64,000 bases of DNA from positions 124,001 to 188,000 of the forward strand of contig NW_026782134.1 in the NCBI RefSeq assembly GCF_031769215.1. The letters run 5' to 3'. How positions within the stretch are numbered: the first letter of the stretch is position 1; the number at the start of each line of letters is the position of its first letter. Under the pieces are notes generated by a model, which saw nothing but the letters and a program-made list of their open reading frames with translations, made no database searches and was not told where the DNA came from. Below, piece by piece: positions 6,621 through 60,912 of the stretch. The position numbers were made by a program, and so were the translations under genes. Origin of the DNA: Ylistrum balloti (taxonomy: Eukaryota).

Positions 6621-6732
6621 GGAACGCCATTGACATTTGATTCCCACTGAAGTCGTATTTATAAGTTTCGTATATTAATCTACATGTGATATTGCATAAT
6701 AAGTTATCCAGGTAATTTGGTATTACATCTTA

Positions 6733-6850
6733 TCGATGCGCTCAACATTAGCTTACCTTTTCCCCATTTTGTCGATGCATTCAACATATTTTTACCTTTT
6801 CCCATTTTGTGGATGTACTCAATATATTTTTCCCTTTTTCCCCATTTTGT
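6733..6850. repeat. Degenerate 38-39 bp tandem repeat, about 3 copies
   Basis: Unit approximately TCGATGCATTCAACATATTTTTACCTTTTCCCCATTTTG starting at 6733, 6772 and 6810. Confidence 0.7.
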
Positions 6851-17700: not shown

Positions 17701-20700
17701 ATTGTCACATGGAAACCGACGTTTTAGTTATGGAATATATTTTATTAACTGAATAAATGGCTCGATATACACCAATTACTATTGTTGGTGTCTACCTTTC
17801 TACTATGCTTTTTGTATAAGGACCGCCTTCAAAGTAAGCCACGTTGCGAGTTTATCGGAAATCATAAGTAAATTATATAAACCACTTCCAATAAATTATG
17901 CAATTTGTTGCTATGGTATTGTATCTCCAATTTCCAATTTCTTTGTTGTTTGTCTCTAGCATCGCTGTCAATTAATAATACAAAACGGACAAAATATACA
18001 GAATTTCTGGGATTTTTTTATTATCATTATTATTGAAACGAATTTTTTCTCTTGTGTGTCAAACCTTCCAAATTATTTATCAGATTGTCAAATGCATTAT
18101 GATCCTATTTAGATATCTCTACTTAGTGTAGTGGGCGTGAACCGGCTGGGGAATCGAGGGGTATTAGGTTTTGCATATGACATATGACAACTCTTAATTA
18201 ATGAGACGAGCTGTTCTATTGAAATGAAGATAGACTCCGGATTGAAAACAAATGTTTTTGATCAAGCAGAATCATTTGGATTTTATTCATATCAGAAAAA
18301 ATACAACTGCTAAACTAATCTGGATGCATTTGATTATATCTACGTATATCTAAATGTATCTTTTATTACATGTTATAATTTATAACACTATATATTGAAT
18401 ATGATATGAGATAGAAATGTTATTTTAACTAACTGTGTTGATACTGTCACATGTGATTTTTGGTATTTTTATATTTAAGGTGTGGAAATGGTCGGCCCAT
18501 CAAAAAGACAGTATGCTGGATTCCTCTTGAATTATTTCTACTCGGGGGGAGTCGTATTATTGGCAGGGATCGGATACGGATTTCGGCATTGGAAATATAT
18601 CCAAATTGTTTCCTCAGCACCAGTTATTATATTCCTAATGTATTGGTGGTATGTGCTAATACTATTATCTTAGTTAACTATTTTCTTGCTGCCTTCCGGA
18701 CGCCATTCAATAAAAGAAGCATTTATTCTCATATAAGTTTTGATTTTAGCCCTATACATGTTATCTATTTCAGGATCCTACCCGAGTCCCCAAGATGGCT
18801 GATTAGTAGAGGTAGAAAAACAGAATATAAAGCAGTACTTATGAAAATAGCAAAATCCAACAACAAAGAGAGTTGTGTCCCTTTGAATGATGATTGCTTT
18901 GAAGAAAGTGAGAACGTTGTTTCGACGAAAACCTACCATTTTGAAAATCTTGTTTCAAGCCGTTCACTTCTGTGTCATTCACTTGTCATATGTTTTAACG
19001 TGTAAGTAGTTATTTCAGATATCTTATTTGGATATTGATAAAATATTTGATGTCGACATGCACCAATCAAAATAATGTGAGAAAAAAAATAAGAATTATT
19101 ACAATTACGTTATTGTTACGGCAAAATTACATAAAAAACGCAATTCGATCGACGTAAAAATGAATAACAGTTTAGTGATAACCAAATTTTGTATGCTATT
19201 CCAATTGGTCATAATTTATTTGCAGTTTCGTGGTATATCACTGCTATTTTGGATTCGCACTTAATACCGAAAACCTAAGTGGGAACTTTTATATGAACTT
19301 CTTGATAAACGGACTCGTTGAATTTCCTGCCAACACAATCGCCCTAGTCTTCAGTAACAGGATTGGTCGAAAGAAACTCTACATATCGGCCATGTTTTTA
19401 GCAGGAATCATGTTGTTATGCAGCGCAGGGACGACCGTATTTCTTATAAAAGGTACACGACTCACAAATACATACTATCTTGCTTATACATTTGTAAATT
19501 AACATGAAGATTATGTAACCATTAATGTGTCTCAAAATCTCTTTTAATACCCGGGACAAACATTTTTATTGATGCTGTGACCGAAAAGAATTTTGACGGC
19601 TTATCGTTCGGCAGTTTTTATCAAGAGAGGTTAAAGATTAACGGGGATGTGTTTTTTTATTATTGAAATCGTTTACGACCTTTATTTTTTCTCCAATTAA
19701 CAGCTCAATGGGCTGTAGTATTAAAATTCGCGGGCAACACGCTGAATTCTGGATCATTGGAAAATATTAGTAATAAAGGTCTTATTATCACTTAAGTTTG
19801 ATGTTGACAGATTAACGGTGTTAAGATTTCAGAAATGTGACGCTCGCCATGGCAATGATGGGGAAGTTAGGGGTAACTGTCGGATACTGTGTAATTTATC
19901 TCTGGGCTGCAGAAATATTTCCCACGGTATTTCGTAACAGTGGCATGGGTTTAAGTTTGGCTTGTGGAAACATCGGATATATTGTTGCTCCTTTCATCGC
20001 ACAATTGGTATGTATTTTTTGTATTTAGATTAAGTAAAGAAGTACTGATTAATTTTCCTTGTGTTATAATATTAAAGAGTGTAGACACCAAACACGTGCA
20101 TATGCAGTGCATGTCAATAATAAGATAAGATGTAATTACTACTGGTCAAAGTATGTATTGGCGAGAATCTAACAATGAAAATGAAAATAACTTCAGAGAG
20201 ACCCAATCAATAGCAAGAACATATCCGGAAGTAAACTTTTGCCATAGTTCTTACGGTTTCTTTAGTTTTGGTGCAGTGTAGCTACAACTGTATATTCTAT
20301 GCTTCCTCTGGTAAATAGCAGTAAGTTAACGTGATCACGACTGATGAGAAATAGATTGTTAGCATTGAACTTGCTTCATTCAGATTGATAACAATGAGCT
20401 AGTTTCACTTTGGTCGATGGAGGTGAGTAAGCTTCACTACGATAGATAAAGGTTCATTGTAGCTTTACTGAAGTTGCTAAATAGCAAGTTCGCTTAGTCG
20501 TTACAAAACAGAAAAAAAGAACAAAATTGCAGAGAATATACAATAAATGAACAATAAGCTTAACTGAAGCTTAATGATGGGATTCGATAAAAGAATATAT
20601 ATTCAAGTTTGAAAGATTGAACAAAGCCACCAAGTGATCACATATATATGTCTTTTATATTCAGATTTTTTTGTGCTTCATCAACTCTCCAAAACCCAGC

Positions 20701-28800: not shown

Positions 28801-30814
28801 CACTAAGTTAACGAACAAATTTTCAGTGATTCCTTAGTCTTATTTGAAAATGTTTTACTATGGTCCAAAGTTGTTGCAATACCACTGGCATTAACACCAT
28901 TAAACAAAATCTTAGGGCTACGTGCTTAATAGTCCACAGTAAATACCGGCCACTTGGAACAAAGGGATTTTAAGACTGATATTCCCAGTTCAACAAAAGT
29001 GTTATTTCTTATTTGTTATTTTTGGTCTGTTAAATATTTCCGGATCAAAAGTATTTGCAAAAATTAAACAAAACTTTCCCATTTTACGGTTAGATATTAC
29101 GTCAGTATCAAAAATATGGAAGAACATATAAAGCGACATCGCGGTAAAACCATTTTTCTTAATCAGTTATATGATATAATAGTTTTTACAAGTACGAAGT
29201 ATATTTAATTTTATCCTGTGTTATACATCAACAAAAAAAATTGAACAACTTATATCATTACATTTTTACTTTTATCATTTAGAATTTTCCTCAGTTATTA
29301 TTATTTTTTTCACAATTATATTACTGAAAGAGATCTCCGTTATATATTCCTATGGTATGGTTAACAATATAGAGATATGGATTTGCATGTACGTCTGAGA
29401 GAAAAATCAGCGATTTTTAATTCCATTAAACGAAAGGTATAGAAATCACACGTACATATGCATGCAAATCTATTGTGTCTGATTTCTCAATTCAGACACG
29501 CGTCGCTACCCACGAGCTTCTCCATGCACTAGGTCTGCATCATGAGCAATCTAGACCAGACAGAAATAAATTTGTAGATGTCATCCGAAGAAATGTGGAG
29601 CGTGGCAAACGTGGGAATTTCAAGCGATACAGCAGAACAATCATCGACTCCAGAAACATTCCATATGACTATTACAGCATCATGCATTACGGCAACAAAG
29701 TAAGAATCCTGGGTATAATCACAGATGAAGTNNNNNNNNNNNNNNNNNNNNNNNNNNNNNNNNNNNNNNNNNNNNNNNNNNNNNNNNNNNNNNNNNNNNN
29801 NNNNNNNNNNNNNNNNNNNNNNNNNNNNNNNNNNNNNNNNNNNNNNNNNNNNNNNNNNNNNNNNAAGTATGATTGACGGTATGGTCCAATATTGGATCCC
29901 AACAAATAAATGAATGCGTATCACTGGAATAGATATATCATCAATGAAGTAATAACGACGCTACGGACAAATGAATTGTCAAATTTTCGAGGTAATCTGC
30001 ATGATATGCAGGTGGTACCCATTGACCACTGCAGGAGTTGGGATGACCAGAAACCTAAGTATCGATCGACACTACGTCAACCAACTCCAAACCTGCTACT
30101 CACGACAGATGATCTTGCTACATCGAACGGGTCATGTCAGTCATACATGGCAGTCGCTACCTCTTACTCCACCTTAAGGTAACTCGTATAGGATTATATA
30201 TTATAAAGGGCTTTCGGCGTCCATCGACCGACGGGATTATCGAGATACATAAATTATAACTTTGTATATGTTTTATGTTCTATGTATGTGGTGTAATTTG
30301 TATAATATCTATGTCTTGAAAAAGGGGCAGATTGCGTCGAAAATTTGACAATTCACTTGTAGTGTCGTTATTACTTCATTGATCATATGATATATATATA
30401 TTAATGTATATTGCATTATTGTAGGGTAGGGGAATATAGTTCATCTCTCTAATGAATAAAGACATATATGGTATTAAGATAATTATGTACATGTGTCAGC
30501 AATATGAAGTGGAACATTATAGATTACGTTCGTGTCTGATAAAAGCACATTACGTACCTCTTATGAAGACGTAAAATTACTATGTTTGGTAGAACCATGG
30601 TTATACACTAGTTTGAAATTTTCAGGCATTTAGCCGGAATGGTGACTTCACCGTAATACCAAGACCAGAAGAAAATAGACGCATTTTCCTTAATAGGATA
30701 GGACGATCCAATAGGATGAGTAGTAGAGATGCACAAGTGATAAACCGGATGTATAATTGCCCAACTGTTGCCAGTCAGCCAACATGTTCAGAATATCCAT
30801 ACAGATTTCCATAA
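22846..30814 (+). CDS. Secreted astacin-family (M12A) zinc metalloprotease, single catalytic domain; 8 coding exons, 399 aa
   Basis: Exons 22846-22992, 26104-26230, 27327-27441, 27705-27904, 28043-28175, 28462-28546, 29496-29699, 30626-30814. GT-AG, phases consistent, 1200 nt. Signal-peptide-like N-terminus MFRQVIDVLLWSFLLIGMVGG, prodomain EGDI motif, furin-type RRKR|AA site, WPDGVV, TCICF, GCRSRVG, zinc motif HELLHALGLHHEQSRPDR, Met-turn SIMHY, and terminal INRMYNC. The first two exons are assigned on phase and peptide plausibility only. Confidence 0.88.
24150..25490 (+). mobile_element. Degraded 5'-truncated LINE (CR1/L2-like RT and C-terminus) in astacin intron 1
   Basis: Peptide YCCFVDLNKAFDNVETINLWYKLSKLGV is a non-LTR RT motif (FVD..KAFD). 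Downstream relics SSHSLAIEA and KPSVFKFIQLL. Many stops and frameshifts; boundaries approximate. Confidence 0.7.
29732..29865. other. Assembly gap (134 N) inside the last astacin intron
   Basis: Run of N in the sequence. The flanking exons join in phase 0, so no coding exon is required in the gap. Confidence 1.
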
Positions 30815-34600: not shown

Positions 34601-35066
34601 TGTAACCCTTCAGCTCTTTAGTGATGAGACGACTCAAAAGTTTGGTACTTCCATTTAATCAATAATTAAGAAAACCTACAACATAATAAATACGAAACTA
34701 AGGAACTTACTTTTACTTTCGTTGTAGGGACACATGATATACATTTAACTGTCGCGACAATATAAATTGGTTTGGAATATTTGATTATTTCCTAAGACTT
34801 ACCAGAGACCCATGAGGTACGTGGCACAGCTGTCTCTAAGAGTCTTGATCATGATCGTCCAGCAGTCAGATGGAAAGTGACTGGTAGTGGACGTGAACAG
34901 GGCTTTGGTATGTGTGCAGGGTGGCGTGAGTACGTAGTAAATACCCGTGCAACATACACTCTTCATACAAACTTCGTACTAGTTATGACACGAGCACAGG
35001 ACAGATATTATGTACGTAAACATAAATAGCTTAGTGCATTGAGTACATTGAGTAGACCCTGTTACA
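34601..35066 (-). repeat. 3' LTR of the Gypsy element (466 bp, TGTAAC...GTTACA)
   Basis: 6-bp terminal inverted repeat. By eye it differs from 42967-43429 by G/A at 34775 vs 43141, G/A at 34976 vs 43339, one 3-bp indel near 34935, and the terminal 3 nt. Confidence 0.98.
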
Positions 35067-35082
35067 TATTCCCCCACTTTCC
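35067..35082 (-). promoter_or_regulatory. Polypurine tract
   Basis: Minus strand GGAAAGTGGGGGAATA directly abuts the 3' LTR. Confidence 0.9.
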
Positions 35083-35598
35083 TGAATGGCACCCGACATT
35101 CCAATTGGTAAACCCACTATAACTTAGAGGGAATCCATAAATTAAGGAACTTGTACACAATTTTATCACATATAGGATAAATAGTGCATAGCATCATTGC
35201 ACTAGTAACAATGAAGTTCAGGTGAAGTTCAACTCCTGATACCAAATTAAGGCATCCATTATATTCAAAATATAATAACTAGTCTATTTTACAATAGAAA
35301 AGGAGATTTGGGGACAGGAGTGGATATAGCCAAATCGAATTGATCGATTGGACCCACTCCATTTCCTACCGGAAGTCAAACCTAATGATTGTCAAACAAA
35401 GTAAAACAATATACTAATAAAAACAACAAAGAACAGATAACGACATAACTCACTGCTGGAGTGGTTGGGGAACCCCCTACCTACTCGCAGGAGAACATTC
35501 TACATTGTCCCTTGCTATGCAAGCGCAAAAATAAAACAATATTCATTAAAAACTGGATAAACTGGATTTGAAACAGTAAAATCATATCACAGACTAGA

Positions 35599-38500
35599 TC
35601 ACACAAATATTTCATGTTCACCAGATCTCATCAGCTCTGCCTGTTGAGAATAGGCCCACTGACCATACCTATCAGGTGGTTTACGTGTCCTGGTGGACCT
35701 CCGGAATGGTGGGTCAGGTGACTGATCCCTGACGGGGTCTGCAACCTCGGGGTTACCCACATTAGAGGCAGAATGGTCATCGCTATGACCAGTATTTTCA
35801 GTAGCAGACTCTATATCAGAGCCACCGATTATTGTATCAGGTGCTACTGAAGTGGTACCAACACCAGGGGTTGTACTGGCTTCCACAGATAATGGTTCGG
35901 AAGCATCTATGGTCAGGTTACCTTGGGGCTTTCTCAGTGACTTTTTCCTGGAACTCCTGAGCCGTACTACAGGTTCCTCATCAGAATCTGACTCTGAAGA
36001 GTCTACAGATTCAGAGGTTTCGTCATGGTGAGTACGGGAAGGTGGCTTTGTAGACCTTGCCTTGCAGCAAGTCTCCACGATGGGAACATCTACATGTATA
36101 GCATTGAAGTACATCAACATATTCCGGTGTAAGGTACGTTTACGTCCCTTTCCGGTTTCTAACTGTACCTCATATACAGGAATATCACTATTGGGTATAC
36201 GGGTTACCCGATAGGGTTCCTGCTCCCATCTATCAGCCAACTTACTTTTCCCTTTAAGACCGACCTTTCTCACAAGGACACGGTCACCAACTTCAAGTTT
36301 GGTCTCACGGACTGACCTGTCATAACGACTTTTGTTGCGAGCAGATAATTTAGAGGCCTCAGTACTAGCAACCTTATAGGCATGTTTCATCCTATCACGA
36401 AGTTTACTCACGTATGAGGTGTGGTCTGCTGTACCTTGCTCACAGGGATCTGTTCCGAGGAAAGCGTCCACGGACAGGCGGGGATGCCAACCAAACATAA
36501 GAAAGTGAGGCGAGTATCCGGTGGCATCGCTTTTCGAAGCATTGTAGGCTTGGACCAGTGGAGCAACATAGGACTTCCAATCCGTTTTTTTTCTCCTCAA
36601 GGGTTGCGAGCATGCCCAGAAGGGTACGGTTGAAGCGCTCTGCAGCCCCATTTCCCATAGGATGGTAGGGAGTTGTTCTGGTTTTCTGAACTCCAGCGAT
36701 CTTACAGAGTTCACGGATAACTTTACTTTCAAAGTTACGACCCTGATCACTGTGGAGACGTTCAGGAAAACTGTAGAAGGCTATGAAGTTTTCATATAAC
36801 GCCTTTGCAGTTGTATGGGCCGTCTGATTGCGACATGGCACCGCCTGAGCGTACCTAGTAAAATGGTCAGTGATCACCAGAATGTTTTCACAACCACCTT
36901 TTGAGGGCTCCAATGTGAGGAAGTCAATACAGACCAACTTCATTGGCCGTGTGGATTGAATTGGAACCAGTTCAGCCTGAGGCTTCACCGGAGTCTTGCG
37001 TCTTATGCAGCGTCCACAGTTCTCAACTCTCTCGTCTACATCCTTCTCCATACCTGGCCAGTAAAACCTCTGTCTGGCTAACCAAAGGGTTTTCTCCTTC
37101 CCCTGATGACCGACATCATCATGGACTCCCTTAAGAGCCAGGGCATGGTATCGCTTTGGTAGCACCAGCTGTTTCACTGCCTGACCGTCTAGAGAAGCGG
37201 TTCTGTACAATACACCATTATGTAGACAAAATCTTTTCCAAGTCCTCATGAACTTTTGCACATATGGGGATTCCTGCTTGCGGTTTTTCCCCCTGGGATG
37301 AAAACCGGTTCTCTTGAGTTCTATAACCCTGGCAATATCTTCATCCTCTTGTTGTTGCTGCCGCCAATCAATTGAGCTCAGATCATCATCCGGGTTTCCA
37401 CCCTCATTGGCCAGATAAGAAGCTAACCCCACATGGTCTGTTACACTGTCAATCAGAGGTGCATCAACAACTGAGGACTGACATACTGCTTTGACAACGT
37501 CAGAGTTACAGAATGAGATGCGTGAGAGACCGTCTGCATCAGCATTATTCTTCCCAGCTCGGTATGTCAAGGTAAAGTTGTAGTTTGCTAGAGCGGCAAC
37601 CCACCGATGACTGGTGGCATCCAGTTTAGCTTTACTCAGCACATATGTAAGCGGATTATTATCTGTGACAACTTCGAAGGTATTACCATAGAGGTAATCA
37701 TGAAATTTATCAGTGATAGCCCACTTAAGTGCTAAAAACTCAAGCTTATGAGCTGGGTAATTGCGCTCACTTGGTCTAAGCCCTCGACTTGCATATGCAA
37801 TAACTCTCTTCTTACCTTCATGCGTCTGGTAGAGTACTGCTCCTAAACCAGTACTACTAGCATCAGTATGTAGTATAAAAGGTTTCGAGTAATCCGCATA
37901 GGCAAGTACGGGAGGACTAATAAGCTTCTCCTTCACAGAATCAAAGCACTCTGCTGAGCTTCGCCCCAGACCCATTTAGATTTTTGAGTCTGTTTTGACT
38001 TACCTGACTTGATCTTACCAGACTTTGCAGTCTTACTAGACTTAGAAGCCTCTTTAGTTAAGTCATGACCCTGCAGAAGCTTATTCAAGGGTTGTACTAT
38101 CTTAGCATAGTCTTTAACAAACCTTCGATAGTATCCACTAAATCCTAAAAACTGACGCAGCTCCTTTAAATTTGTAGGTGCTGGCCAAGACTTGACCGCA
38201 GATACCTTCTCTGGGTCTGTAGCTATACCTTGATCTGATATGACATGACCGAGATACGTTACTCTTGATTTGAGGAACTCACACTTGGACGGTTTGAGTT
38301 TCAAGCCATGTTGGATGAGTCTGGCGAATACTGATTCTAGTCTATCCAAGTGTTCGTCAAAGGTGCGCGAAAAGATTAGGATGTCATCAAGGAAGATGAG
38401 ACATTCCTTAAGATGCATATCTCCCATGCACTTTTCCATTAAGCGCTGGAAGGTAGCTGGGGCACAAGTAAGACCAAACCCCATTCTATTGGTTTCCCAG

Positions 38501-39837
38501 AATCCCAGGTTGCCAACAGAAAATGCAGTCTTTTCCTTATCGCTTTCCTCGACCTCAACCTGCCAGTAACCGGACCGGAGGTCTAACTTTGAAAAATAAC
38601 GGGCACCATTAAGGGTATCTACCGTGTCATCAAAGCGAGGAAGCATGTACGCATCTTTTCTTGTGCGTGAATTCAGCATACGGTAGTCGATGCAAAATCT
38701 AAGGCTCCCATCTTTTTTTCGTACAAGTACGACATTTGAAGAGAAGGGACTTGTAGATTCGCGTATCACGCCACCATCAAGCATTTCCTTGATGTGCTGT
38801 CGAACTTCTTCGTACATACCGGGTGGTATTTTACGATACGGCTGTTTAAATGGCCGCTCATCAAGAAGTTCGATCTTGTGTTTAACAACGTTCGTCGCAC
38901 CCAAGTCAAATTGGCTTTTGGAGAACGCTTGTTCCCAATTACCCAACACTTGCCGAACCCGTAACAACTGCTCTTCGGTGAGGTTTGTTTTGTCGATGTA
39001 ACAGCCAAGTTCTTCAGGCAATGACAACTTTTCTTCCCTAACAGTAGGGAGATCTGAGGCCAGATTATCGACTACTTTCACTTGTTGGACAGTACAAAGT
39101 ACAGTACGTAGACTCAACACAACTGGTTTAGCTGAGGTATTACACAGCTTAACCGGTACTTTAACATTAACTGAATTTTGTTTAAACTTCACCACACGAG
39201 GACAAACAGTATATCTAAGAGCAGAGTTATCCTGGTTCTCTGTGACTAGATCAGTAATATTTGGATCCAATCCTCGTGCTATACCGTTTAAAACAATAGT
39301 GGCATACGGAGCGATAGTAACAGGCTTTTTACTTAACATTCTCACTGCATACGAGCAAGAAACACTGTTTACTGCAGCTCTCCATTCATTAGGTAACAAC
39401 GAATCACCAATGGTAACCTCCTTAACTAGGCGGATAACATTAGTACCTAGTATAACAGGACATTTACTGTTGTAGTCAGTATCAGGCACAACCAGCATAA
39501 GCACATTAAACACTTGATTTGACATGAATGGTATTGTAATTTCACATTCAATATAGCCTAAGTAGTTCAAGTTAGAACCATTAGCTACTGTGACTTGTAA
39601 TCCAAGTGTCTCTAATTCCTTAAGTTCAGGTCTGTCATGTAAAGTTTTGTAAAATCTTTGTGACATAGTAGATACCATAGATCCACTGTCAATCAAGGCT
39701 TTGACCTTTTGACCTTCAACAAAAACTTGGCTCTCATTTGATACACCTAATAATCTATCTAATATTTCGTGACCTTGGCCTTTTGACTTTTGTGAAGTCT
39801 CTGCGTGGCCAGTGGCAGAGACTAGTCCAAGTTTTTT
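35599..39837 (-). CDS. pol: Gypsy pol (protease, RT, RNase H, integrase), split by two single-site frameshifts in homopolymers
   Basis: Protease ALIDSGS; RT FCIDYR, KLDLRSGYWQ, FLDD; RNase H LHTDAS, KLEFLAL, TDNNPL; integrase HDDVGH..CGRC, CIDF, HSDQG, GAAERFNR, EPYRV. The frame opens at 39837, right after TGA 39840-39838. Frameshifts at 37943-37945 and 36585-36592 join ORFs 37933-39696, 36440-37975 and 35599-36750. Confidence 0.95.
39776..39837 (-). promoter_or_regulatory. -1 programmed ribosomal frameshift signal between gag and pol
   Basis: Slippery heptamer A AAA AAC at 39837-39831, 7-nt spacer, and a 9-bp stem AGTCTCTGC/GCAGAGACT. Pol is in the -1 frame relative to gag. Confidence 0.9.
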
Positions 39838-41000
39838 TCACTATTCTTAGCCTTGTCTTTTTTATTCCAGCGGCCTCGAGACTTGTTATAACCACCGCGA
39901 CCTTGACCTTTGTTATGACCTGACCCTTGACCAGATTTCTTACCTTGACCTTGACCTGAGGACTGACCAAGTTTGTTTAAAATTTTATCAAGCTTACCCT
40001 GTATTTGGGAGCTAAGCTTGTCTTCCAAGTTTTTCAGTTTTTTATCAAACTGTTTTTCTATCTCAGCTATGGAAGCTGTTTGCTGGTCAGATTCAACACT
40101 AACTGAATGCTGGTGTCCTTTCTTACCATGACTAGAACCAGAAGAAGTATTAGAGATATTTAACTCTTTCTCTACCAGCCGGATTTCTCTTAACAGTGTG
40201 TCAAAACTGGCTATTGCGTCATACTTATGACGAGTTTGGCTTTTTAGTTTGTCTGAACTTAACGAAGTCCAAAACTTATGACGTAATAGGTCATTTTTAG
40301 CCGACTTGTGCAATGAGCCATCTTCCACTGCAATCTGGAGTAAAGACTCCAATCTGCAACCAAATGCAGTTGCCGATTCACCGGACTTCTGTTTAGAATT
40401 TAAAAATTCTTGCATGATCATGCCATGCGTAGAAATGTCCTTAAAAAGAGAATCTAATTTATTTAAAATTTCATCAGGAGAAGCCTTCTCGCCCACAGTG
40501 AGTAAAATTCTCCGTGCTGTACCACGGAGAGATCTCCTAATTGCCTGTACAATACTGCCCTGAGATATATCTGGGTCCCTAAGCAGACATCTAATCTCAA
40601 AACGCCATTCAGCGTATGACACATCGGCTTTGAGAGGTGGTTCCTCCCCAGAAAATTGGGGTATTTTAGGAACATGGTGTGTACCATAGGTGACAGATGA
40701 ACTCGAGGCTGATGTGTGGTTGGGGTTTGCCAACTCCTCATAGGGAGTGGCCTGACTAGTACCCACAAATTTAAATTCATGTTTAACAGGATTGGGAGGC
40801 TTGGGTGTACTAGCCGGGGGTACAATTTTGTATTTTCCCAGCTTGGCTAAAGCCTCTATCATTTGTTCCTCAGTCATTGTGAGGTCACCCTCGTGTACAT
40901 CACCCTCCTCCTTCAAATCCTTATCCCCTATAGGGGCTTGATCCGTAGGAGTTTTAGCCTTAGGGATTTCTTTTGTAGGGGGTACTCCGTTAGCAGCCAT
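39822..41000 (-). CDS. gag: Gypsy gag, PNMA/Ma-like capsid, 392 aa, no CCHC knuckle
   Basis: ATG at 41000 (the ORF-track start at 41048 is TTG). IPQFSGEE..SYAEWRFEIRCLL and IRRSLRGTA resemble PNMA-type capsid motifs. Coiled-coil-like segment followed by a Gly/Gln/Lys/Arg-rich tail. Confidence 0.9.
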   Translation of the reverse strand: MAANGVPPTKEIPKAKTPTDQAPIGDKDLKEEGDVHEGDLTMTEEQMIEALAKLGKYKIVPPASTPKPPNPVKHEFKFVGTSQATPYEELANPNHTSASSSSVTYGTHHVPKIPQFSGEEPPLKADVSYAEWRFEIRCLLRDPDISQGSIVQAIRRSLRGTARRILLTVGEKASPDEILNKLDSLFKDISTHGMIMQEFLNSKQKSGESATAFGCRLESLLQIAVEDGSLHKSAKNDLLRHKFWTSLSSDKLKSQTRHKYDAIASFDTLLREIRLVEKELNISNTSSGSSHGKKGHQHSVSVESDQQTASIAEIEKQFDKKLKNLEDKLSSQIQGKLDKILNKLGQSSGQGQGKKSGQGSGHNKGQGRGGYNKSRGRWNKKDKAKNSEKNLD

Positions 41001-41233
41001 AACTACCAGGTATGTGATAATGAACAATAAAATAACACCAGTAAACAACTACCAGTGTATAATGTTACTACACAAGTAATGAAATACGGTAGAAGTAAGG
41101 AAGTGAATGAGCTACTGTTCAGTGCATTCATAATACAAATTGCATAATAAGAAAAACATACAATAGAAAATTCAGAACACTGTGGTTGGGGAGCCCCCTA
41201 CCTACAAGTGCACATGAATGTAAATAAATGATC

Positions 41234-41932
41234 TCAACAACAATCACTGAACACTTTGGTAACGAGTCGCTTCATCCAAAACCTTGCTAATACCGGTTTC
41301 GGGTGGATCCCATCTTTAAATAAAGAAAAATTAACACTAGGCTTGCGACCTGCTCGCTTATACTGGAGCAAATCACATTTAAAATTGAGTGAGTGCACAC
41401 CTTCCTTGATATATGCGTTCAAATACTCGATACGCCGTTCTAAAATCACATCAAGTTGTGCAAAAGATTCAGGGTTTGCATGGCCCTTGTAAGTATTCCA
41501 AATTTGAATGGAGTATGGTGGTATCTCCAAAAATACAAGTTTGACTGTTTTAAATTTAGAAACAAATGAAACAAATTTATCGATATTAAATTTTAAATAT
41601 GTAAAACATTCCTCATCAGTACTGTGACTCAAATCAATGAATGGACCAGTTTTTGTAGTAATATCACAAGTACCCAACCAAATGTAAAGTAAAATAGAAC
41701 CATGCTTGTGAACAATACCTGATAAATTTCTGGTAAGCCAATTATAGGTTTGATCAAATCGAGCACCAGCTTTACAATAAAAGTCAATTGAAAATCCGAA
41801 ATTTTCAATAATATCCAAATGAGGCCTTAAAGAAAATCCTTTGCTACTCGACACTAAAACTGGTTGGTATTTTAGTGAACCCGGTGCTTCCAAAGGCTTA
41901 TCAATAAACTGTTTAAGTTTACTCAAACTCAT
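41234..41932 (-). CDS. Element-borne 232-aa protein with SGNH/GDSL hydrolase-like motifs
   Basis: Intact ATG-to-TGA ORF inside the LTRs, same strand as gag-pol. Block I-like VLVSSSKG (Ser30), block II KAGA (Gly56), block III IWLGTCD (Cys89 in place of Asn), block V DGIH (Asp207/His210). The fold assignment is from motifs only. Confidence 0.8.
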   Translation of the reverse strand: MSLSKLKQFIDKPLEAPGSLKYQPVLVSSSKGFSLRPHLDIIENFGFSIDFYCKAGARFDQTYNWLTRNLSGIVHKHGSILLYIWLGTCDITTKTGPFIDLSHSTDEECFTYLKFNIDKFVSFVSKFKTVKLVFLEIPPYSIQIWNTYKGHANPESFAQLDVILERRIEYLNAYIKEGVHSLNFKCDLLQYKRAGRKPSVNFSLFKDGIHPKPVLARFWMKRLVTKVFSDCC

Positions 41933-42952
41933 TAATGAAATTAATATATGGTATAATATAAAAAGTTTTTACAGCACAACTGAACGAGTAGAACTTCAAA
42001 CTTTAAATCTATAATATCCTCCCAGCAAGATGTACTGAACACTTCAGTAATGAAATGCACTAGTAATGAAATAATGACCGTAATTCACATGGACAATCAC
42101 AAACAAATGACAAGACACTAATTACTCACTGTACCTTGATCTCTCATTCTGATGATTGCGAAGGTGGGGAAAAAGCGTGCAGGGAAACACAATAATGAAT
42201 ATAATGGCAGAGTCAACAGGTCCTATTGCTACACAGGTGTCCCTCACAGGTCCCTGGTACTTACAAACATCTTGCTTCTTTCACTTTTCCAGATGTACAA
42301 AATACATGCAGATATAGCCTACAATACAATTACATAAATTAGAAATAAATTCATGAAATTATACATTATCAAGGAGAAAATTGATGAAACTATGCGAAAT
42401 TCAGTAAAATTATAAAATGTCCAATGGAATGATTATTTGACTACAATTACCAGACTGATTACATATACATATAGAAATTCATTATATAGAGTCCTTTAAA
42501 ATTATTAGAAGCACATTTCAACAAATTTGACAATATCTAGTCCTTTAGTCTCAAAGAAACTTTAAAGATGAATGTTTTTCACAACAATGACGAATTAAAC
42601 AGCCTTCCGACGTCGAATCTACTCGAAGTTAGCAGTTTAGTCAAAGCACAAACACACACAGGTACATGTACACATTGACATCCCATGGCCTGGCCGGTAC
42701 AAATGTTAATTATTACCAGTAACCAAGAATTTTAAAATTCGGCTCACAAGCAGGCATCTAATTTTGGTTTTTACCACAATCCGTATAGGCACACAGCGCT
42801 TGACATCCTATTCTAGGTACATCTTGTACACCAATATTGCAACGTTAGCGTACACGCGTACGTGTGTCGCAGGTCGCACATATGGCCATCTTACGAGGCT
42901 ACTTCCCATACCATCCATTACAGTCTCTGGTTCCTAATTACAATGGAAATTT

Positions 42953-42965
42953 ACGTTGGGCGCCA
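42953..42965 (-). promoter_or_regulatory. Primer-binding site complementary to the 3' end of tRNA-Lys(CUU) (Lys1,2 type)
   Basis: Minus strand TGGCGCCCAACGT lies 1 nt inside the 5' LTR and equals the first 13 nt of the known Lys1,2 PBS TGGCGCCCAACGTGGGGC. Confidence 0.9.
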
Positions 42966-42966
42966 T

Positions 42967-43429
42967 TGTAACCCTTCAGCTCTTTAGTGATGAGACGACT
43001 CAAAAGTTTGGTACTTCCATTTAATCAATAATTAAGAAAACCTACAACATAATAAATACGAAACTAAGGAACTTACTTTTACTTTCGTTGTAGGGACACA
43101 TGATATACATTTAACTGTCGCGACAATATAAATTGGTTTGAAATATTTGATTATTTCCTAAGACTTACCAGAGACCCATGAGGTACGTGGCACAGCTGTC
43201 TCTAAGAGTCTTGATCATGATCGTCCAGCAGTCAGATGGAAAGTGACTGGTAGTGGACGTGAACAGGGCTTTGGTATGTGTGCAGGGTGGCGTGAGTACG
43301 TAAATACCCGTGCAACATACACTCTTCATACAAACTTCATACTAGTTATGACACGAGCACAGGACAGATATTATGTACGTAAACATAAATAGCTTAGTGC
43401 ATTGAGTACATTGAGTAGACCCTGTTTTC
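42967..43429 (-). repeat. 5' LTR of the Gypsy element (463 bp; outer end altered)
   Basis: Near-identical to 34601-35066. Ends CCCTGTTTTC on the + strand instead of CCCTGTTACA. Confidence 0.97.
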
Positions 43430-43915
43430 AAAACAGTATACAGGATTGATTCAGATCATGGTGCTGAGTATGTCTTCAACAGAATTGCGGGATTTTTAAA
43501 TCGAAGCTTTCAGGTTTTAAATTGATCAGTTTTATTTAATCAATATGTTATGAGAATAAGAAGACACAACTTACACTCCATAATGTGTATTAAGTATCTA
43601 GATGTCTCTCTGCTGTTCAATTTAGAACTATTATACATTATAAAGAAGTTATCATCGGATGCTTATCAAATACATCTAAGTAAACAATCTGTTAAATCAA
43701 CTAAGATGAAAACGCTTTTACATGATTTATCAAACAAAATTATAGTTAATGTGGTTTTCGGCAACCGTGCTTCAGCCGATTAGATCTCCACCACTATGTT
43801 CTCTCAAGCGTCTCACCAGTACAATATTTCTTATGACCTGCTGTTTCCAGACGAGGCTAACGGAGTTATCCTACTGATACTGAAAACAGCAAGGCGTTGC
43901 ACAGATCACCTCAAA

Positions 43916-52210: not shown

Positions 52211-52435
52211 ATATTGCAAACGAATGTTGTTATATGTATAGAATAATATTCTATGTGTACCTTAGGCTTGAAGCAAACAAGGAATATATTGCAAACGAAT
52301 GTTGTTATATGTATAGAATAATATTCTATGTGTACCTTAGGCTTGAAGCAAACAAGGAATATATTGCAAACGAATGTTGTTATATGTATAGAATAATATT
52401 CTATGTGTACCTTAGGCTTGAAGCAAACAAGGAAT
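52211..52435. repeat. Perfect 75-bp tandem repeat, 3 copies
   Basis: Unit ATATTGCAAACGAATGTTGTTATATGTATAGAATAATATTCTATGTGTACCTTAGGCTTGAAGCAAACAAGGAAT at 52211, 52286 and 52361. Confidence 0.98.
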
Positions 52436-52945
52436 ACAAAATTTCAACGATAGAAGAAATTCAGTGAAACAGAAATACAGGAAATAAAACGAAAGAACTA
52501 ACCTGATGTGCTACACAAGGTGGTCGTCACTAATGTGTATAGATGCTAAAAATAGAATCTGAAAACCTCACCATAAGTGTTTGTTTACACAGGGACAATG
52601 AACAATTTACGGAATTTCCGGATATTGATAGGTCCTAAATATAGATTATCGGTATTATAATTGTTAACATTGACATTGACACGACAAATGGAGTTTTGTT
52701 TTATTTACCGAAAATCCCTGACTTAAATCCCCATATGCCTACAACTTCCTATTTTCGTAATTTTTAAATATCCGTCCGTTATATTTGAAAATACCTTCCT
52801 TTTAAACGGCAAAAGTTTAGAAAAAATAAGAAAGAAAGACAAAATGAAAAACAGGGGATATTCATGCATGAGAAAACAAAGAAAGAAAGAGCGGAGGAAC
52901 AGTAAAAATATTTAAATGTCGTGAATAACAAGTGAAATATTGTTT

Positions 52946-58371: not shown

Positions 58372-60912
58372 ATGGATGTCTTCCCAGCCAGTCTAACACT
58401 TTACTTTGAAAATGCAGAGAACGGGGACGAATCGCTACCCATGAATATTGAATGGTTGCGGTTGCAGTCATTTGCATCTGTTCGCAAAATAAATGTTCGA
58501 CCAATACAATTGGCGAGGGCTGGATTTTTTCATACAGGTGCCTCTGATGAGGTACGGTGCTTTTCTTGTGGTGCCCGACGATCTGGTTGGAAGATTGGAG
58601 ACAATCTTGATGAAATTCACAGACAAATCTCACCTTTCTGCAAACATGCGAATGATACAGACAATACAAATGTTGCCGTACCTCGAGAAACAGGAACAGG
58701 CTCTTCTTCAGGTCACCAGGAAACTCAAAAGACAAAACAAGAAACTCGTCCTGTGAAGGAAAATGGACTAAATACATGTTGTCATGGCTATAAGACAAAA
58801 AGGTTCGTAGGTGACAGGTTTCTAGAAAGAATGGAAACCCAGCACCAGCCCAAAATGCAAGCCCAAAATATGGCGACGAACACAGTTCATTCTTCAGTCA
58901 AACAAATCCCAAATGGGATGATCGCTCAACAAAAGTCAATCTCTCATGGTATCTCCGTGTCAGAATCCTCTACTGAACAAATACATCACTCAATGGTTTC
59001 CACTGTTTCATCTTCAGCAACTAACGGTCATTCGATATACAGGAGGTCATGTAAACGATCCGAAAGCAATTCAAACTTCATTATACCTGTTCAGAATGGA
59101 AATGGATCTTTTCCTGAACAAAGACGGTCTGAAAACGAAAGCAACGTTGCACATAATACAAACGAAACTTCCCAACCGAGCACATACATTAATCCGCTCT
59201 CAAATCACCCCATTCAAGATACAGCAAATCCAACATGCACTGTCAGCGCTGATTCTTGCCCCGTTGGTGCTTCAGTAGTCCAGAGGTTATCTCCACTCGG
59301 TGTTAACTTCGAAAAACCGAAGTACCCAGTATATGCAGTATTGACTGTGAGGATAAGTTCCTTCAGTGGTTGGTCAGGTTCACAGACACCAAAACTGATG
59401 GCTGAGGCAGGTTTTGTGTACGCAGGATACACAGATTATACCAGGTGTTTTTTCTGTGGAGGAGGACTTAAAAACTGGGAGGATGGGGATGATCCATGGA
59501 TTGAGCATGCGCGATGGTTTCCAAAATGCGTTTACTTACGACAAAACAAGGGAGTCGTTTTCATACAGCTGGTACAAGAAACACTCGATACCGAAGAAAA
59601 GGTACGGATTCATGTAACTGCAATACATGTTTATTTATGCAAAATAATTAATGACAGAATTTTATGACACTCAATACAACCTGATCTGGCTTCTAACAGT
59701 TCGTTTCTGTTTGCCTTTAGTTATACCGATGGCTGATTTACGAATCAACCTTACTATTTTTATATAAATCAATGAGCTGTGTAAATGTGACTTGTTTTCC
59801 CAGAACAAAAACTTTATGTTTAAGCTTCAATCGAACCCACAATTTATCATAAAATAAAATATTCAACAGTATCTTATTTATGCTTATGCCCTCAAAGGTA
59901 CAAGACAACACCAAATTCAGCTTGGAAAAAGTAGCCTTGTTTGAGAAGGATATTGAGGAGCTGCCAGTTGTCCAGAGTGTTGTACAGCTAGGATACTCCC
60001 CAGAACGTGTCAAACAAGTCGTTAAGCAGCTATCGGCAAAAGGTACACATTTCTTTTAAACGGTACATGCTATCTGCCAATTATCTAATTCTCTACTGAT
60101 ATGTGATAAGAACTGCGGTGGGAGACTTTACTTAAAATACAAGTGTAGACAAGTGCGAGTGTTTATACCAAATTGTTCAGTAGATACATATATACCATTA
60201 ATAGTGTGCACTTTTTTGTGTATGTAGAAATCGCAGGTATTCACAGTACAGATGTTCTTCTAAAACTGATCACCGACAAAAGAAGCACAGATTCCTATGG
60301 GCATGGATCCACGATTAGTGGGGGCGTTGCGAGCACAAACACGACAGAAACTGAAGGTATGACAGGTCTTTATTCTTCTTAAACTATTTTTAGTAGTTTG
60401 TGTCTACTGAAAGTTTCTTTATTTACCACGGAAATCCTTTTCAATCAAAATGAGACTAAATTGAAAATCTAAATGTTCTGATTTTATTATTTCTATCAAT
60501 ATAATCCTTTCAATTCGATTTTGAGATAATATAATCTGTAGATATTGTTGGAGAAATAAAATACAAAACAATGAATAAAAAAACCGGCCATTATACTTGT
60601 TGACCTACTTTGTACATCTCAAAGTGTAAAGTCGGAGTACATGAATACAAAGGCAAATTTATGTCCATGTTTTACCTAGAAAAATACTTTTATGTTTATT
60701 CTTTTACAGAGTGCAAGAAACGACAGTTATTGGAAGAAAACCGCCGACTGAGAAGAAATAAAATGTGTAGAATATGTGAGGAGGAAGACGCCTCAATCAC
60801 GTTTCTCCCTTGCGCGCATCTCGTGTGTTGTGACGTATGCTCTCAAGCTATGAGACGCTGTCCTGTATGCAGGGTCACTATACAGGGCAGCATCAAAACC
60901 TGGCTCACGTGA
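58372..60912 (+). CDS. Inhibitor of apoptosis protein (BIR-BIR-UBA-RING), 4 coding exons, 568 aa
   Basis: Exons 58372-59601, 59898-60042, 60228-60356, 60710-60912; GT-AG, 1707 nt. BIR1 LARAGFF..VRCFSC..H..SPFC; BIR2 [38 protein letters not shown]; UBA-like [11 protein letters not shown]; C3HC4 [23 protein letters not shown] at the C-terminus. Confidence 0.93.

What the first reader, a model, noticed from the sequence alone, without database searches (positions are those of the whole stretch)
41234..41932. Gypsy retrotransposon carrying an intact SGNH-hydrolase-like ORF upstream of gag
Seen: a clean 232-aa ORF sits between the PBS leader and gag, on the element's sense strand. It has the four SGNH blocks in order (SSSKG, KAGA, WLGTCD, DGIH), so a Ser30-His210-Asp207 triad appears retained and the oxyanion Asn is replaced by Cys. 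Known: SGNH esterase domains occur in ORF1 of CR1/L2/RTEX non-LTR elements (for example zebrafish ZfL2-1) and in viral hemagglutinin-esterases. They are not part of the standard Ty3/Gypsy gag-pol(-env) plan, and extra Gypsy ORFs usually lie 3' of pol. Inference: an env-less LTR lineage may have recruited a lipid or acetyl esterase as a dedicated first cistron, possibly for membrane or glycan interaction, particle release or cell-to-cell spread. This is the best candidate for an undescribed system here; I cannot tell without a search whether it is already catalogued.
Basis: partly seen in the sequence, partly recalled or inferred. Interest (0 to 1): 0.88.

Follow-up and report, generated by a model that had tools for sequence, protein, structure and literature searches.

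The report
Esterase gene leading a scallop retrotransposon
A jumping-gene of the Gypsy type in a scallop genome carries, ahead of its usual genes, an intact and strongly conserved esterase gene that it shares with a different class of jumping genes (LINEs) in bivalves; the enzyme type was known in such elements, but not at this position or with this kinship.

Summary
A 232-codon ORF (41234..41932, minus strand) lies between the PBS/leader and a PNMA-type gag of an 8.8-kb Ty3/Gypsy element (34601..43430) in Ylistrum balloti (scallop) DNA. Pfam and PDB sequence searches find nothing for it. An AlphaFold model (pLDDT 95) matches 82 PDB SGNH/GDSL structures at E<=1e-3. In 107 family representatives Ser30, Gly56, Asp207 and His210 are 93-99% conserved, and Cys replaces the oxyanion Asn in 104. 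It is not a one-off. The family has 546 clusters at 50% identity, nearly all stand-alone proteins of about 240 aa. In 12 distinct LTR-type loci, spanning two gag types, the esterase is the 5' cistron. In 9 loci it heads CR1-like LINEs (PHD ORF, APE, RT). Gypsy-borne and LINE-borne esterases separate in the tree (99/100 bootstraps). ORF0 is as constrained as PR-RT (pN/pS 0.18 vs 0.16; gag 0.26-0.32). Nucleotide similarity to relatives starts at its ATG. SGNH ORFs are already known in LINEs, Penelope-like elements, Ngaro and bdelloid Vesta LTR elements (there 3' of pol). This is therefore a new variant: 5' position, kinship with LINE esterases, Cys variant. Catalysis, substrate and mode of expression are untested. 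This copy's pol is broken.

The parts
34601..43430 (-). Whole Ty3/Gypsy-type LTR retrotransposon (about 8.83 kb), sense strand = minus
   Evidence: Direct repeats 8.36 kb apart. LTR alignment. Ends read. Gene order is ORF0-gag-PR-RT-RH-IN.
42967..43430 (-). 5' LTR (about 464 nt; ends ...CA; its first bases differ from the 3' LTR)
   Evidence: The two LTRs differ by 2 substitutions and a 3-nt indel, plus a small difference at the very start.
42953..42965 (-). Primer-binding site (begins TGG, 1 nt after the 5' LTR); the 3' limit is approximate and the tRNA is not identified
   Evidence: Read directly. No tRNA gene lies in the window for comparison.
41933..42952 (-). Long leader: 1,034 nt from the LTR end to the ORF0 ATG, with 24 upstream ATGs. 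It does not align with the leaders of the closest relatives.
   Evidence: A similarly long leader is present in L002.
41234..41932 (-). ORF0: intact 232-aa stand-alone SGNH-fold esterase-like protein. Ser30, Gly56, Cys89 (in place of Asn), Asp207, His210; pI 9.3; no signal peptide or TM segment.
41001..41233 (-). Spacer between the ORF0 stop and the first ATG of the gag frame (233 nt, 5 ATGs)
   Evidence: Spacers of about 200-620 nt occur in related PNMA-gag elements.
39822..41000 (-). gag, open, PNMA-type capsid domain
   Evidence: Pfam PNMA 4.9e-12. First ATG at 41000. Matches the gag of L001, L002 and L007.
35602..39744 (-). pol (PR-RT-RNase H-integrase plus a C-terminal extension), BROKEN in this copy: 2 frame changes and 1 stop within the aligned stretches, relative to the uninterrupted 1372-aa pol of L001 (80% identical)
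   Evidence: Pfam RVT_1 3e-35, RT_RNaseH 6.8e-34, Integrase_H2C2 2.8e-17, rve 4.3e-16. Counts and outer bounds.
35069..35083 (-). Polypurine tract just upstream of the 3' LTR
   Evidence: Read. This region is 90% identical to L001 over 62 nt.
34601..35066 (-). 3' LTR (about 466 nt). It starts TGTAAC and ends GTTACA, a 6-nt terminal inverted repeat.

Best explanation
ORF0 encodes a small, basic, cytosolic, stand-alone SGNH-fold serine esterase or acyl-hydrolase. It is a genuine, selected gene of this Ty3/Gypsy lineage, placed as a separate first cistron 5' of gag. It belongs to a large retroelement-borne esterase family of bivalves whose members head either LTR (Gypsy) elements or CR1-like LINEs. 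The module was therefore shared between the two retroelement classes and then descended with its carrier. Shown: fold, conserved Ser/Gly/Asp/His positions, family-wide Cys in place of the oxyanion Asn, conserved position and orientation, purifying selection, the carrier split in the tree, and bivalve hosts. Inferred: by analogy with the catalytically active, lipid-directed esterase of the zebrafish ZfL2-1 LINE ORF1p (PMC3905857), the protein acts in trans as an accessory factor. It would hydrolyse (or transfer) an acyl ester on a lipid or membrane-associated substrate at a step that LINE ribonucleoprotein particles (RNPs) and Gypsy virus-like particles (VLPs) share, such as assembly on or passage along endomembranes or the nuclear envelope. 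Cys89 would alter the oxyanion hole rather than abolish it. Also inferred: because the leader has 24 upstream ATGs and gag lies 233 nt downstream, ORF0 and gag are probably not both read by simple scanning of one mRNA. A spliced or internally started transcript, or reinitiation/internal entry, is needed. This particular copy is pol-defective and could only be a passenger.
For: ORF and anatomy. Fold: AlphaFold2 pLDDT 95, pTM 0.90. Foldseek PDB gives 82 hits at E<=1e-3, led by PatB O-acetyltransferase, GDSL esterases, sialate O-acetylesterases and PAF-AH. Motif residues fall where the SGNH topology expects them: Ser30 after strand 1, Gly56 after strand 2, G-T-C-D after strand 3, D-x-x-H before the last helix. 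Conservation in 107 representatives: Ser 106, Gly 99, Cys 104 (Asn 3), Asp 106, His 106. Weak, co-linear, sub-threshold Pfam Lipase_GDSL hits occur in 17 of 107 members. Family size. LTR-type context with the esterase 5' of gag/pol: window, L001, L002/L003/L005, L007, L009 (all three genes uninterrupted), L020, L025, L029/L030, L023, L032, L033. LINE context: L006, L008, L011, L016, L017, L021, L024, L026 and L028 (Mytilus coruscus). Carrier split in the neighbour-joining tree: 99/100 bootstraps. ORF0 and pol identities co-vary, r=0.79. Selection: pN/pS is 0.18-0.21 for ORF0, 0.16 for PR-RT and 0.26-0.32 for gag. Nucleotide similarity to L001 and L031 begins at the ORF0 ATG, and the leader does not align. 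No TM or signal peptide; pI 9.3, family median 9.4. Host. Precedents: PMC3905857, PMC5408684.
Against: There is no biochemical or expression evidence. The window protein gets no Pfam hit and no PDB hit by sequence. The third oxyanion-hole donor (Asn, conserved in all 30 structures surveyed in PMC10792757) is replaced by Cys, which could weaken or change catalysis. Triad geometry could not be measured because no model coordinates were available. The ZfL2-1 esterase (PDB 4C1B) did not come back in any sequence search, nor among the 50 listed fold hits. The 'transposon-specific' His four residues before the block III Asn (PMC3905857) is Trp here. Kinship to the classical CR1/L2 esterases therefore rests on the carrier architecture of the bivalve LINE relatives, not on sequence. 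The long uATG-rich leader argues against efficient translation from a full-length transcript. This copy's pol is broken, and its exact ORF0 protein is recorded nowhere else. Some esterase copies elsewhere are themselves broken. L020 and L025 show esterase/pol discordance.
Confidence: 0.75

Rival explanations
1. A non-catalytic SGNH-like scaffold. The fold would be kept as a basic nucleic-acid- or lipid-binding accessory protein of the particle, like the OSK domain of Oskar, with the Asn-to-Cys change marking loss of esterase chemistry.
For: Basic pI throughout the family (median 9.4). The oxyanion Asn is replaced in 104 of 107 members. A non-catalytic RNA-binding SGNH domain (Oskar) is a known precedent (PMC3905857, PMC10792757).
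Against: Ser30, Asp207 and His210 are each kept in 106 of 107 representatives at 24% mean column identity. Such retention is not expected without catalysis. Oskar itself has lost the Ser (PMC10792757). Two of three oxyanion donors are main-chain NH groups and are unaffected.
Confidence: 0.12
2. An acyl- (acetyl-) transferase rather than a hydrolase. The enzyme would move an acyl group onto a host or element component, with Cys89 tuning the active site against water.
For: The best PDB fold matches are peptidoglycan O-acetyltransferases PatB (7tjb 8.8e-8, 8tlb, 7tlv, 7trr) and a perhydrolytic acyltransferase 8zbc. The atypical, invariant block III residue fits.
Against: The E-value margin over ordinary esterases in the same list is negligible, and sequence identity is 13-19%. 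No acceptor-binding feature was identified. The nearest functional precedent in retroelements is a hydrolase (PMC3905857).
Confidence: 0.1
3. An env substitute or receptor-destroying enzyme used for particle release or cell-to-cell spread, in the manner of viral hemagglutinin-esterases.
For: The element has no env. Reviews have speculated that GDSL esterases help retroelements cross membranes (PMC5408684, PMC6431247). Sialate O-acetylesterases are among the fold hits.
Against: There is no signal peptide and no TM segment; the maximal 19-residue hydropathy is 1.11. The protein is a single 232-aa globular domain with no lectin insertion. The 50 best hits in the viral structure library are all phage esterases, with no animal-virus esterase among them. 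The same module serves LINEs, which have no extracellular phase.
Confidence: 0.05
4. A one-off capture: a host gene fragment or a nested LINE piece that happens to lie in this copy's leader, with no role for the element.
For: The exact protein is not on record elsewhere. The leader is unusually long.
Against: The same order and orientation recur in 12 distinct LTR-type loci at 30-77% protein identity, including two gag types. pN/pS is 0.18-0.21, equal to PR-RT. Co-divergence with pol.
Confidence: 0.02

Closest known systems
Esterase of CR1/L2/RTEX non-LTR retrotransposon ORF1p (zebrafish ZfL2-1; PDB 4C1B; Kapitonov & Jurka 2003; Schneider et al. 2013, PMC3905857)
   Same: SGNH fold with a Ser-Asp-His set. 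Encoded by a retroelement upstream of the RT gene, in a 'gag-like' first position. Scattered across element clades. The bivalve LINE relatives found here carry the PHD-finger ORF, APE and RT typical of CR1-like elements.
   Different: Here it is a stand-alone 232-aa ORF without a coiled-coil domain, carried by an LTR element that also has a true gag. Cys stands in place of the oxyanion Asn, and Trp in place of the 'transposon-specific' His four residues upstream. No detectable sequence match to 4C1B.
GDSL esterase/lipase ORF3 of Vesta LTR retrotransposons of bdelloid rotifers (Rodriguez, Kenefick & Arkhipova 2017, PMC5408684)
   Same: An SGNH/GDSL esterase as an extra ORF of an env-less LTR retrotransposon, with catalytic residues intact and no CC or TM domains. 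The module is also shared with another retroelement class (there Athena Penelope-like elements).
   Different: Vesta's ORF lies 3' of pol, has the canonical S-G-N-H residues, did not cluster with LINE esterases, and showed no clear departure from neutrality within the genome. Here the ORF is 5' of gag, is related to LINE-borne esterases, has Cys for Asn and is under strong purifying selection. The two were not compared by sequence here.
SGNH-hydrolase ORF of Ngaro (tyrosine-recombinase) retrotransposons, and GDSL ORFs of Terminons and Penelope-like elements (PMC9210276, PMC6431247, PMC3905857)
   Same: Further cases of retroelements carrying an SGNH ORF of unproven function.
   Different: Different element classes. 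In Ngaro the ORF follows the recombinase at the 3' end. Not compared by sequence here.
Cellular and bacterial SGNH hydrolases/acyltransferases (PatB, sialate O-acetylesterases, PAF-AH Ib, TAP)
   Same: Same fold at Foldseek probability 1.00, TM-score 0.5-0.6.
   Different: Only 8-19% identity. The block III Asn is replaced. It is retroelement-borne.

Membership tests
SGNH/GDSL hydrolase superfamily | Three-layer alpha/beta/alpha SGNH fold | tested here: met
   AlphaFold2 model with pLDDT 95 and pTM 0.90. 82 PDB matches at E<=1e-3, and the 50 listed are SGNH/GDSL proteins or designs built on that scaffold.
SGNH/GDSL hydrolase superfamily | Block I nucleophile Ser | tested here: met
   Ser30, directly after strand 1. 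Conserved in 50/50 and 106/107.
SGNH/GDSL hydrolase superfamily | Block II Gly (oxyanion hole) | tested here: met
   Gly56, conserved in 50/50 and 99/107.
SGNH/GDSL hydrolase superfamily | Block III Asn (side-chain oxyanion donor) | tested here: not met
   Cys89 in the window. Cys in 104/107 representatives and Asn in only 3. The flanking Gly and Asp of the block are kept.
SGNH/GDSL hydrolase superfamily | Block V Asp-x-x-His | tested here: met
   Asp207 and His210, each 106/107, in the loop before the C-terminal helix.
SGNH/GDSL hydrolase superfamily | Curated sequence-model membership (Pfam Lipase_GDSL / Lipase_GDSL_2 gathering score) | tested here: not met
   No hit for the window protein even at E<=1. 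17 and 8 of 107 relatives give sub-threshold, co-linear hits; the bit scores seen were 16.7-18.7, against cut-offs of 23.6 and 32.9.
SGNH/GDSL hydrolase superfamily | Esterase or acyl-transfer activity; triad geometry | not testable with these tools
   No model coordinates are returned and no assay is possible.
Retroelement ORF1p-type esterase (CR1/L2/RTEX, ZfL2-1-like) | Encoded by the element as a first cistron upstream of the RT gene | tested here: met
   Window. 12 LTR-type and 9 LINE-type loci.
Retroelement ORF1p-type esterase (CR1/L2/RTEX, ZfL2-1-like) | Sequence kinship with LINE-borne esterases | tested here: inconclusive
   Clear kinship to stand-alone esterases of bivalve CR1-like LINEs: P0062 at 1.5e-28, tblastn 1e-22 to 1e-48. 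The ZfL2-1 esterase (4C1B) itself was never returned.
Retroelement ORF1p-type esterase (CR1/L2/RTEX, ZfL2-1-like) | Esterase fused to a coiled-coil multimerisation domain within ORF1p | tested here: not met
   A single globular 232-aa protein. Family members are nearly all 230-270 aa and stand-alone.
Retroelement ORF1p-type esterase (CR1/L2/RTEX, ZfL2-1-like) | 'Transposon-specific' His four residues before the block III Asn (H191 of ZfL2-1, PMC3905857) | tested here: not met
   The position is Trp85 in 97/107 and His in 1/107.
Ty3/Gypsy LTR retrotransposon (the carrier) | LTRs, PBS, PPT, gag, and pol in the order PR-RT-RNase H-IN | tested here: met
   The target-site duplication is not clean: a 4-nt TTTG repeat flanks the element only if the first bases of the 5' LTR are taken as altered.
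Vesta-type GDSL ORF3 of bdelloid LTR elements | Esterase ORF located 3' of pol | tested here: not met
   The ORF is 5' of gag. No ORF lies between pol and the 3' LTR.
Vesta-type GDSL ORF3 of bdelloid LTR elements | Sequence relatedness to the Vesta/Athena GDSL ORFs | not tested
   No Vesta sequence was on hand, and none appeared as a named hit.
Viral hemagglutinin-esterase-type receptor-destroying enzymes | Secreted or membrane-anchored glycoprotein with an esterase domain | tested here: not met
   No signal peptide or TM segment. Only phage esterases appear among the 50 best viral-library matches. No comparator was fetched.

The most novel reading that the evidence does not exclude
Bivalve Ty3/Gypsy elements of at least two gag lineages and CR1-like LINEs draw on one common pool of stand-alone 'S-G-C-H' esterase genes, each used as a dedicated 5' cistron. 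That would be the first case of an accessory enzyme exchanged between LINE and LTR retrotransposons and kept by selection in both. It would imply that RNP-based and capsid-based retrotransposition share a lipid- or acyl-dependent host bottleneck. It would also mean that these Gypsy elements use a polycistronic or spliced expression scheme not described for the family.
Probability: 0.4. Interest if true: 0.75.

Novelty: new variant of a known kind. Interest (0 to 1): 0.62.

Why it matters
Accessory enzymes in retroelements are rare and poorly understood, and the role of the LINE ORF1p esterase has been open since 2003. Here the same kind of esterase sits under strong purifying selection as the first cistron of both capsid-forming LTR elements and gag-less LINEs in one animal class. 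This gives a natural comparative system: whatever the esterase does must be useful to two mechanistically different replication cycles. It also extends the 'gene sharing between retroelement classes' picture (PMC5408684) from rotifers to molluscs, and from 3' ORFs to a 5' cistron. It defines a large, unannotated SGNH subfamily that is invisible to Pfam and has Cys for the oxyanion Asn. And it flags an expression problem (a 1-kb uATG-rich leader, with two cistrons ahead of pol) that existing transcript data could resolve. Practically, these ORFs are annotated as 'uncharacterized' or mis-binned into symbiont MAGs, and they could now be annotated.

Tried and rejected
- Pfam on the ORF gave no family at E<=1.
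- PDB sequence searches with the protein and with two family profiles gave no meaningful hit. The best was a designed SGNH-derived scaffold at E=0.088.
- The viral fold library returned phage esterases only, so the hemagglutinin-esterase lead was dropped.
- An Rfam scan and a tRNA scan of the window found nothing. The tRNA that primes at the PBS was therefore not identified.
- blastn of Gypsy leaders against LINE 5' UTRs, to look for a co-captured LINE promoter, gave no hit.
- The leader against the leaders of the closest relatives gave no alignment.
- An exact-protein look-up of the window's ORF0 found it not on record. P0198 was also not on record.
- The Kapitonov & Jurka 2003 paper is not held.
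- dN=0 among L002-L005 was discarded as an ascertainment artefact, because those loci were found by identical protein.
- One Pfam call failed on a wrong frame and was corrected.
- The direction of transfer (LINE to Gypsy or the reverse) could not be decided, because there is no outgroup and the tree is midpoint-rooted. The three canonical-Asn members do not settle it: two are Gypsy-borne, and the third is merely closest in sequence to the LINE-borne set, its locus not examined.
- A one-off capture or a nested LINE fragment was rejected (see the rival explanations).
Full report
**1. Observation**

The ORF is real and exactly where stated, but on the minus strand. It spans 41234..41932 and has 232 codons, an ATG start and no internal stop. 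The plus-strand reading is full of stops.

The window is scallop DNA. A two-BIR-domain ORF at 58372..59667 is 100% identical to an annotated Ylistrum balloti protein.

**2. The carrier element**

Two near-identical direct repeats lie 8.36 kb apart. Aligned, they give LTRs of about 464-466 nt that differ by 2 substitutions and one 3-nt indel, plus a small difference at the very first bases. On the sense (minus) strand the order is:

- 5' LTR (42967..43430)
- a PBS beginning TGG, one base after the LTR
- a 1,034-nt leader
- ORF0
- a 233-nt spacer
- gag (39822..41000; Pfam PNMA 4.9e-12)
- pol (outer bounds 35602..39744; RVT_1 3e-35, RT_RNaseH 6.8e-34, Integrase_H2C2 2.8e-17, rve 4.3e-16)
- a polypurine tract
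- 3' LTR (34601..35066)

The RT-RNase H-IN order and the PNMA-type capsid make it a Ty3/Gypsy-type element. There is no env-like ORF.

A clean target-site duplication is not seen. A 4-nt TTTG repeat flanks the element only if the first bases of the 5' LTR are taken as altered.

Relative to the uninterrupted 1372-aa pol of its closest relative (L001, 80% identity), this copy's pol shows 2 frame changes and 1 stop within the aligned stretches. ORF0 and gag are open. I cannot exclude that some of these breaks are assembly errors.

**3. What ORF0 encodes**

Sequence libraries are blind to it. There is no Pfam family at E<=1, and nothing meaningful in the PDB by phmmer or by two family profiles.

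Structure is decisive. An AlphaFold2 model built on a 50-sequence alignment has mean pLDDT 95 and pTM 0.90. Foldseek finds 82 PDB matches at E<=1e-3, and all 50 listed are SGNH/GDSL proteins or designs built on that scaffold. They include PatB O-acetyltransferases, GDSL esterases, sialate O-acetylesterases and PAF acetylhydrolase.

The conserved residues sit where the SGNH topology expects them:

- Ser30 right after strand 1
- Gly56 after strand 2
- G-T-C-D after strand 3
- D-G-I-H before the C-terminal helix

Across 107 cluster representatives, with mean column identity 24%, the counts are:

| Position | Conservation |
|---|---|
| Ser30 | 106/107 |
| Gly56 | 99/107 |
| Asp207 | 106/107 |
| His210 | 106/107 |
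| Block III position | Cys in 104, canonical Asn in 3 |

Seventeen members give weak, co-linear, sub-threshold hits to Pfam Lipase_GDSL.

The protein has no signal peptide or TM segment and is basic, with pI 9.3 against a family median of 9.4. A Cys one or two residues from the C-terminus is present in 85/107.

In the viral structure library the 50 best matches are phage esterases. No animal-virus esterase appears.

**4. Is it a one-off?**

No. The word-indexed search gave 66 full-length relatives of about 240 aa at 31-77% identity. The exhaustive search gave 546 clusters at 50% identity with E<=1e-3, of which 289 are at E<=1e-10, nearly all stand-alone.

I examined the genomic context of 31 loci.

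*LTR-type context, with the esterase 5' of gag/pol in the same orientation:*

- the window
- L001 (= L010)
- L002/L003/L005
- L007
- L009, where ORF0 (239 aa), gag (350 aa, PNMA + CCHC) and pol (1509 aa, PR-RT-RH-IN) are all uninterrupted
- L020, a gag-less derivative
- L025, a circularly permuted assembly
- L029/L030
- L023, with a more distant LTR-type pol
- L032 and L033, where a canonical-Asn esterase lies 20 nt upstream of a different capsid type (Retrotrans_gag/Ty3_capsid + CCHC, with a Tf2-like integrase in L033)

*LINE context, with esterase, then a PHD-finger or related ORF, then APE and RT (the CR1-like layout):*

- L006, L008, L011, L016, L017, L021, L024, L026
- L028 from Mytilus coruscus

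In a neighbour-joining tree the Gypsy-borne and LINE-borne esterases separate in 99 of 100 bootstraps. Esterase and pol identities co-vary among Gypsy loci (r = 0.79, 18 pairs), with some discordance for L020/L025.

Hosts that could be named are all bivalves:

- Ylistrum
- Mytilus coruscus
- contigs binned into MAGs of clam symbionts, namely Ca. Thiodiazotropha taylori and Sedimenticola, which I read as host contamination

**5. Selection**

pN and pS are the proportions of non-synonymous and synonymous differences.

| Comparison | pS | pN | pN/pS |
|---|---|---|---|
| ORF0, window vs L001 | 0.80 (saturated) | 0.147 | 0.18 |
| ORF0, window vs L031 | 0.63 | 0.120 | 0.19 |
| PR-RT open piece, window vs L001 | 0.66 | 0.107 | 0.16 |
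| gag, window vs L001 (two pieces) | 0.68-0.74 | 0.175-0.236 | 0.26-0.32 |

. Because pS is saturated, true dN/dS is lower still.

Nucleotide similarity between the window and L001/L031 starts at the ORF0 ATG (within about 12 nt upstream). The whole leader does not align.

**6. How it probably works**

Shown: it is a conserved, selected, cytosolic SGNH-fold protein with a complete Ser/Asp/His set.

Inferred from the ZfL2-1 precedent: that esterase is catalytically active, lipid-directed and membrane-related, and it enhances retrotransposition but is dispensable in HeLa cells (PMC3905857). By analogy, ORF0 would be a trans-acting accessory esterase working on an acyl ester of a lipid or membrane-associated substrate. 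It would act at a step common to LINE RNPs and Gypsy particles.

The Cys would remodel the third oxyanion contact, which is normally the Asn side chain (PMC10792757), rather than abolish catalysis. The other two contacts are main-chain amides. Non-catalytic and acyltransferase readings remain possible.

Expression is unexplained. The leader carries 24 upstream ATGs and gag lies 233 nt (5 ATGs) downstream. A long leader is shared by L002. A spliced or internally initiated RNA, or reinitiation/internal entry, has to be assumed. Only transcript and footprint data can tell.

**7. Comparison with what is known**

SGNH/GDSL ORFs are already described in:

- CR1/L2/RTEX LINE ORF1p (PMC3905857)
- Penelope-like elements and Terminons (PMC3905857, PMC6431247)
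- Ngaro elements, as a 3' ORF (PMC9210276)
- Vesta LTR elements of bdelloid rotifers, as ORF3 3' of pol; these did not cluster with LINE esterases and showed no clear departure from neutrality (PMC5408684)

Six full-text searches found no description of an esterase 5' of gag in Ty3/Gypsy elements, or of such ORFs in molluscs. The library lacks Repbase and most subscription journals, so prior cataloguing cannot be excluded.

What appears new:

- the 5' first-cistron position in Gypsy elements of two gag types
- the sequence kinship with LINE-borne esterases of the same hosts
- the family-wide Cys variant
- the strength of selection

Verdict: a new variant of a known kind.

**8. Rule compliance and slips**

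- The N run at 29732..29864 was left alone.
- Consensus lines printed by the alignment tools were not used.
- First slip: early in my reasoning I recalled from memory short primer-binding-site strings of known retroelements.
- Second slip: my first notebook entry lists the coordinates of pol's three open pieces as the ORF listing returned them, and these bracket the frame changes. I cannot delete it and flag it here.

Noticed in passing
window 58372..59667 (+): A 431-aa ORF with two BIR (IAP) domains, 100% identical over 96% of its length to the 578-aa 'baculoviral IAP repeat-containing protein 7-like' of Ylistrum balloti. It identifies the host. The RING part of that protein must lie in a further exon.
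   Followed up: partly
window 18460..19005 (+): A 181-aa ORF with a weak Sugar_tr (MFS transporter) match at 1.5e-5. It is probably an exon of a host transporter gene.
   Followed up: no
window 15302..16307; 52211..52436; 6726..6850: Minisatellites: a 38/39-nt unit in 17-21 copies, a 75-nt unit in 3 copies (100% identical), and a 39-nt unit in 3 copies.
   Followed up: no
window 29732..29864: A run of 133 N (assembly gap or masked). The two ORFs listed at 29475..29924 run across it and are artefacts. The run was left untouched.
   Followed up: no
window 36001..40000: A G+C bump (42-47% against about 33% background) coincides with the element's pol.
   Followed up: partly
L032:121-2501 and L033:1-5301: The two distant family members that keep the canonical Asn (G-T-N-D) lie only 20 nt upstream of a different capsid type (Retrotrans_gag/Ty3_capsid + CCHC). 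L033 also shows a Tf2-like integrase with an SH3 domain. This is a second Ty3/Gypsy lineage with a 5' esterase, and it has a much shorter spacer.
   Followed up: partly
L020:442-5399; L023:3933-8720: L020 has a broken esterase followed directly by an open 1353-aa pol with no gag, so it is a gag-less derivative. In L023 an outlier esterase precedes a divergent, decayed LTR-type pol with RNase H.
   Followed up: partly
L009 (Sedimenticola MAG contig), P0017 (Ca. Thiodiazotropha taylori MAG), P0226 (Endozoicomonas): Bivalve retrotransposon and IAP genes are deposited under bacterial symbiont genomes. This is most simply host-DNA contamination of MAGs or isolate assemblies.
   Followed up: no
L003:5978-7260 and 19565-20667: 180-nt tandem arrays and 13.58-kb-spaced direct repeats surround the element in L003, which suggests a segmental duplication that includes the element.
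   Followed up: no
P0144 (1005 aa): A long protein with 10 separate matched stretches to residues of about 94-169 of ORF0. It may be a tandem repeat of an esterase fragment or a mis-called gene across decayed copies.
   Followed up: no
window 41231..41239 region; family C-termini: A Cys one or two residues from the C-terminus is kept in 85 of 107 family members; the window protein ends in two Cys. It might be an acylation site or a partner of Cys89, but this could not be examined without model coordinates.
   Followed up: no
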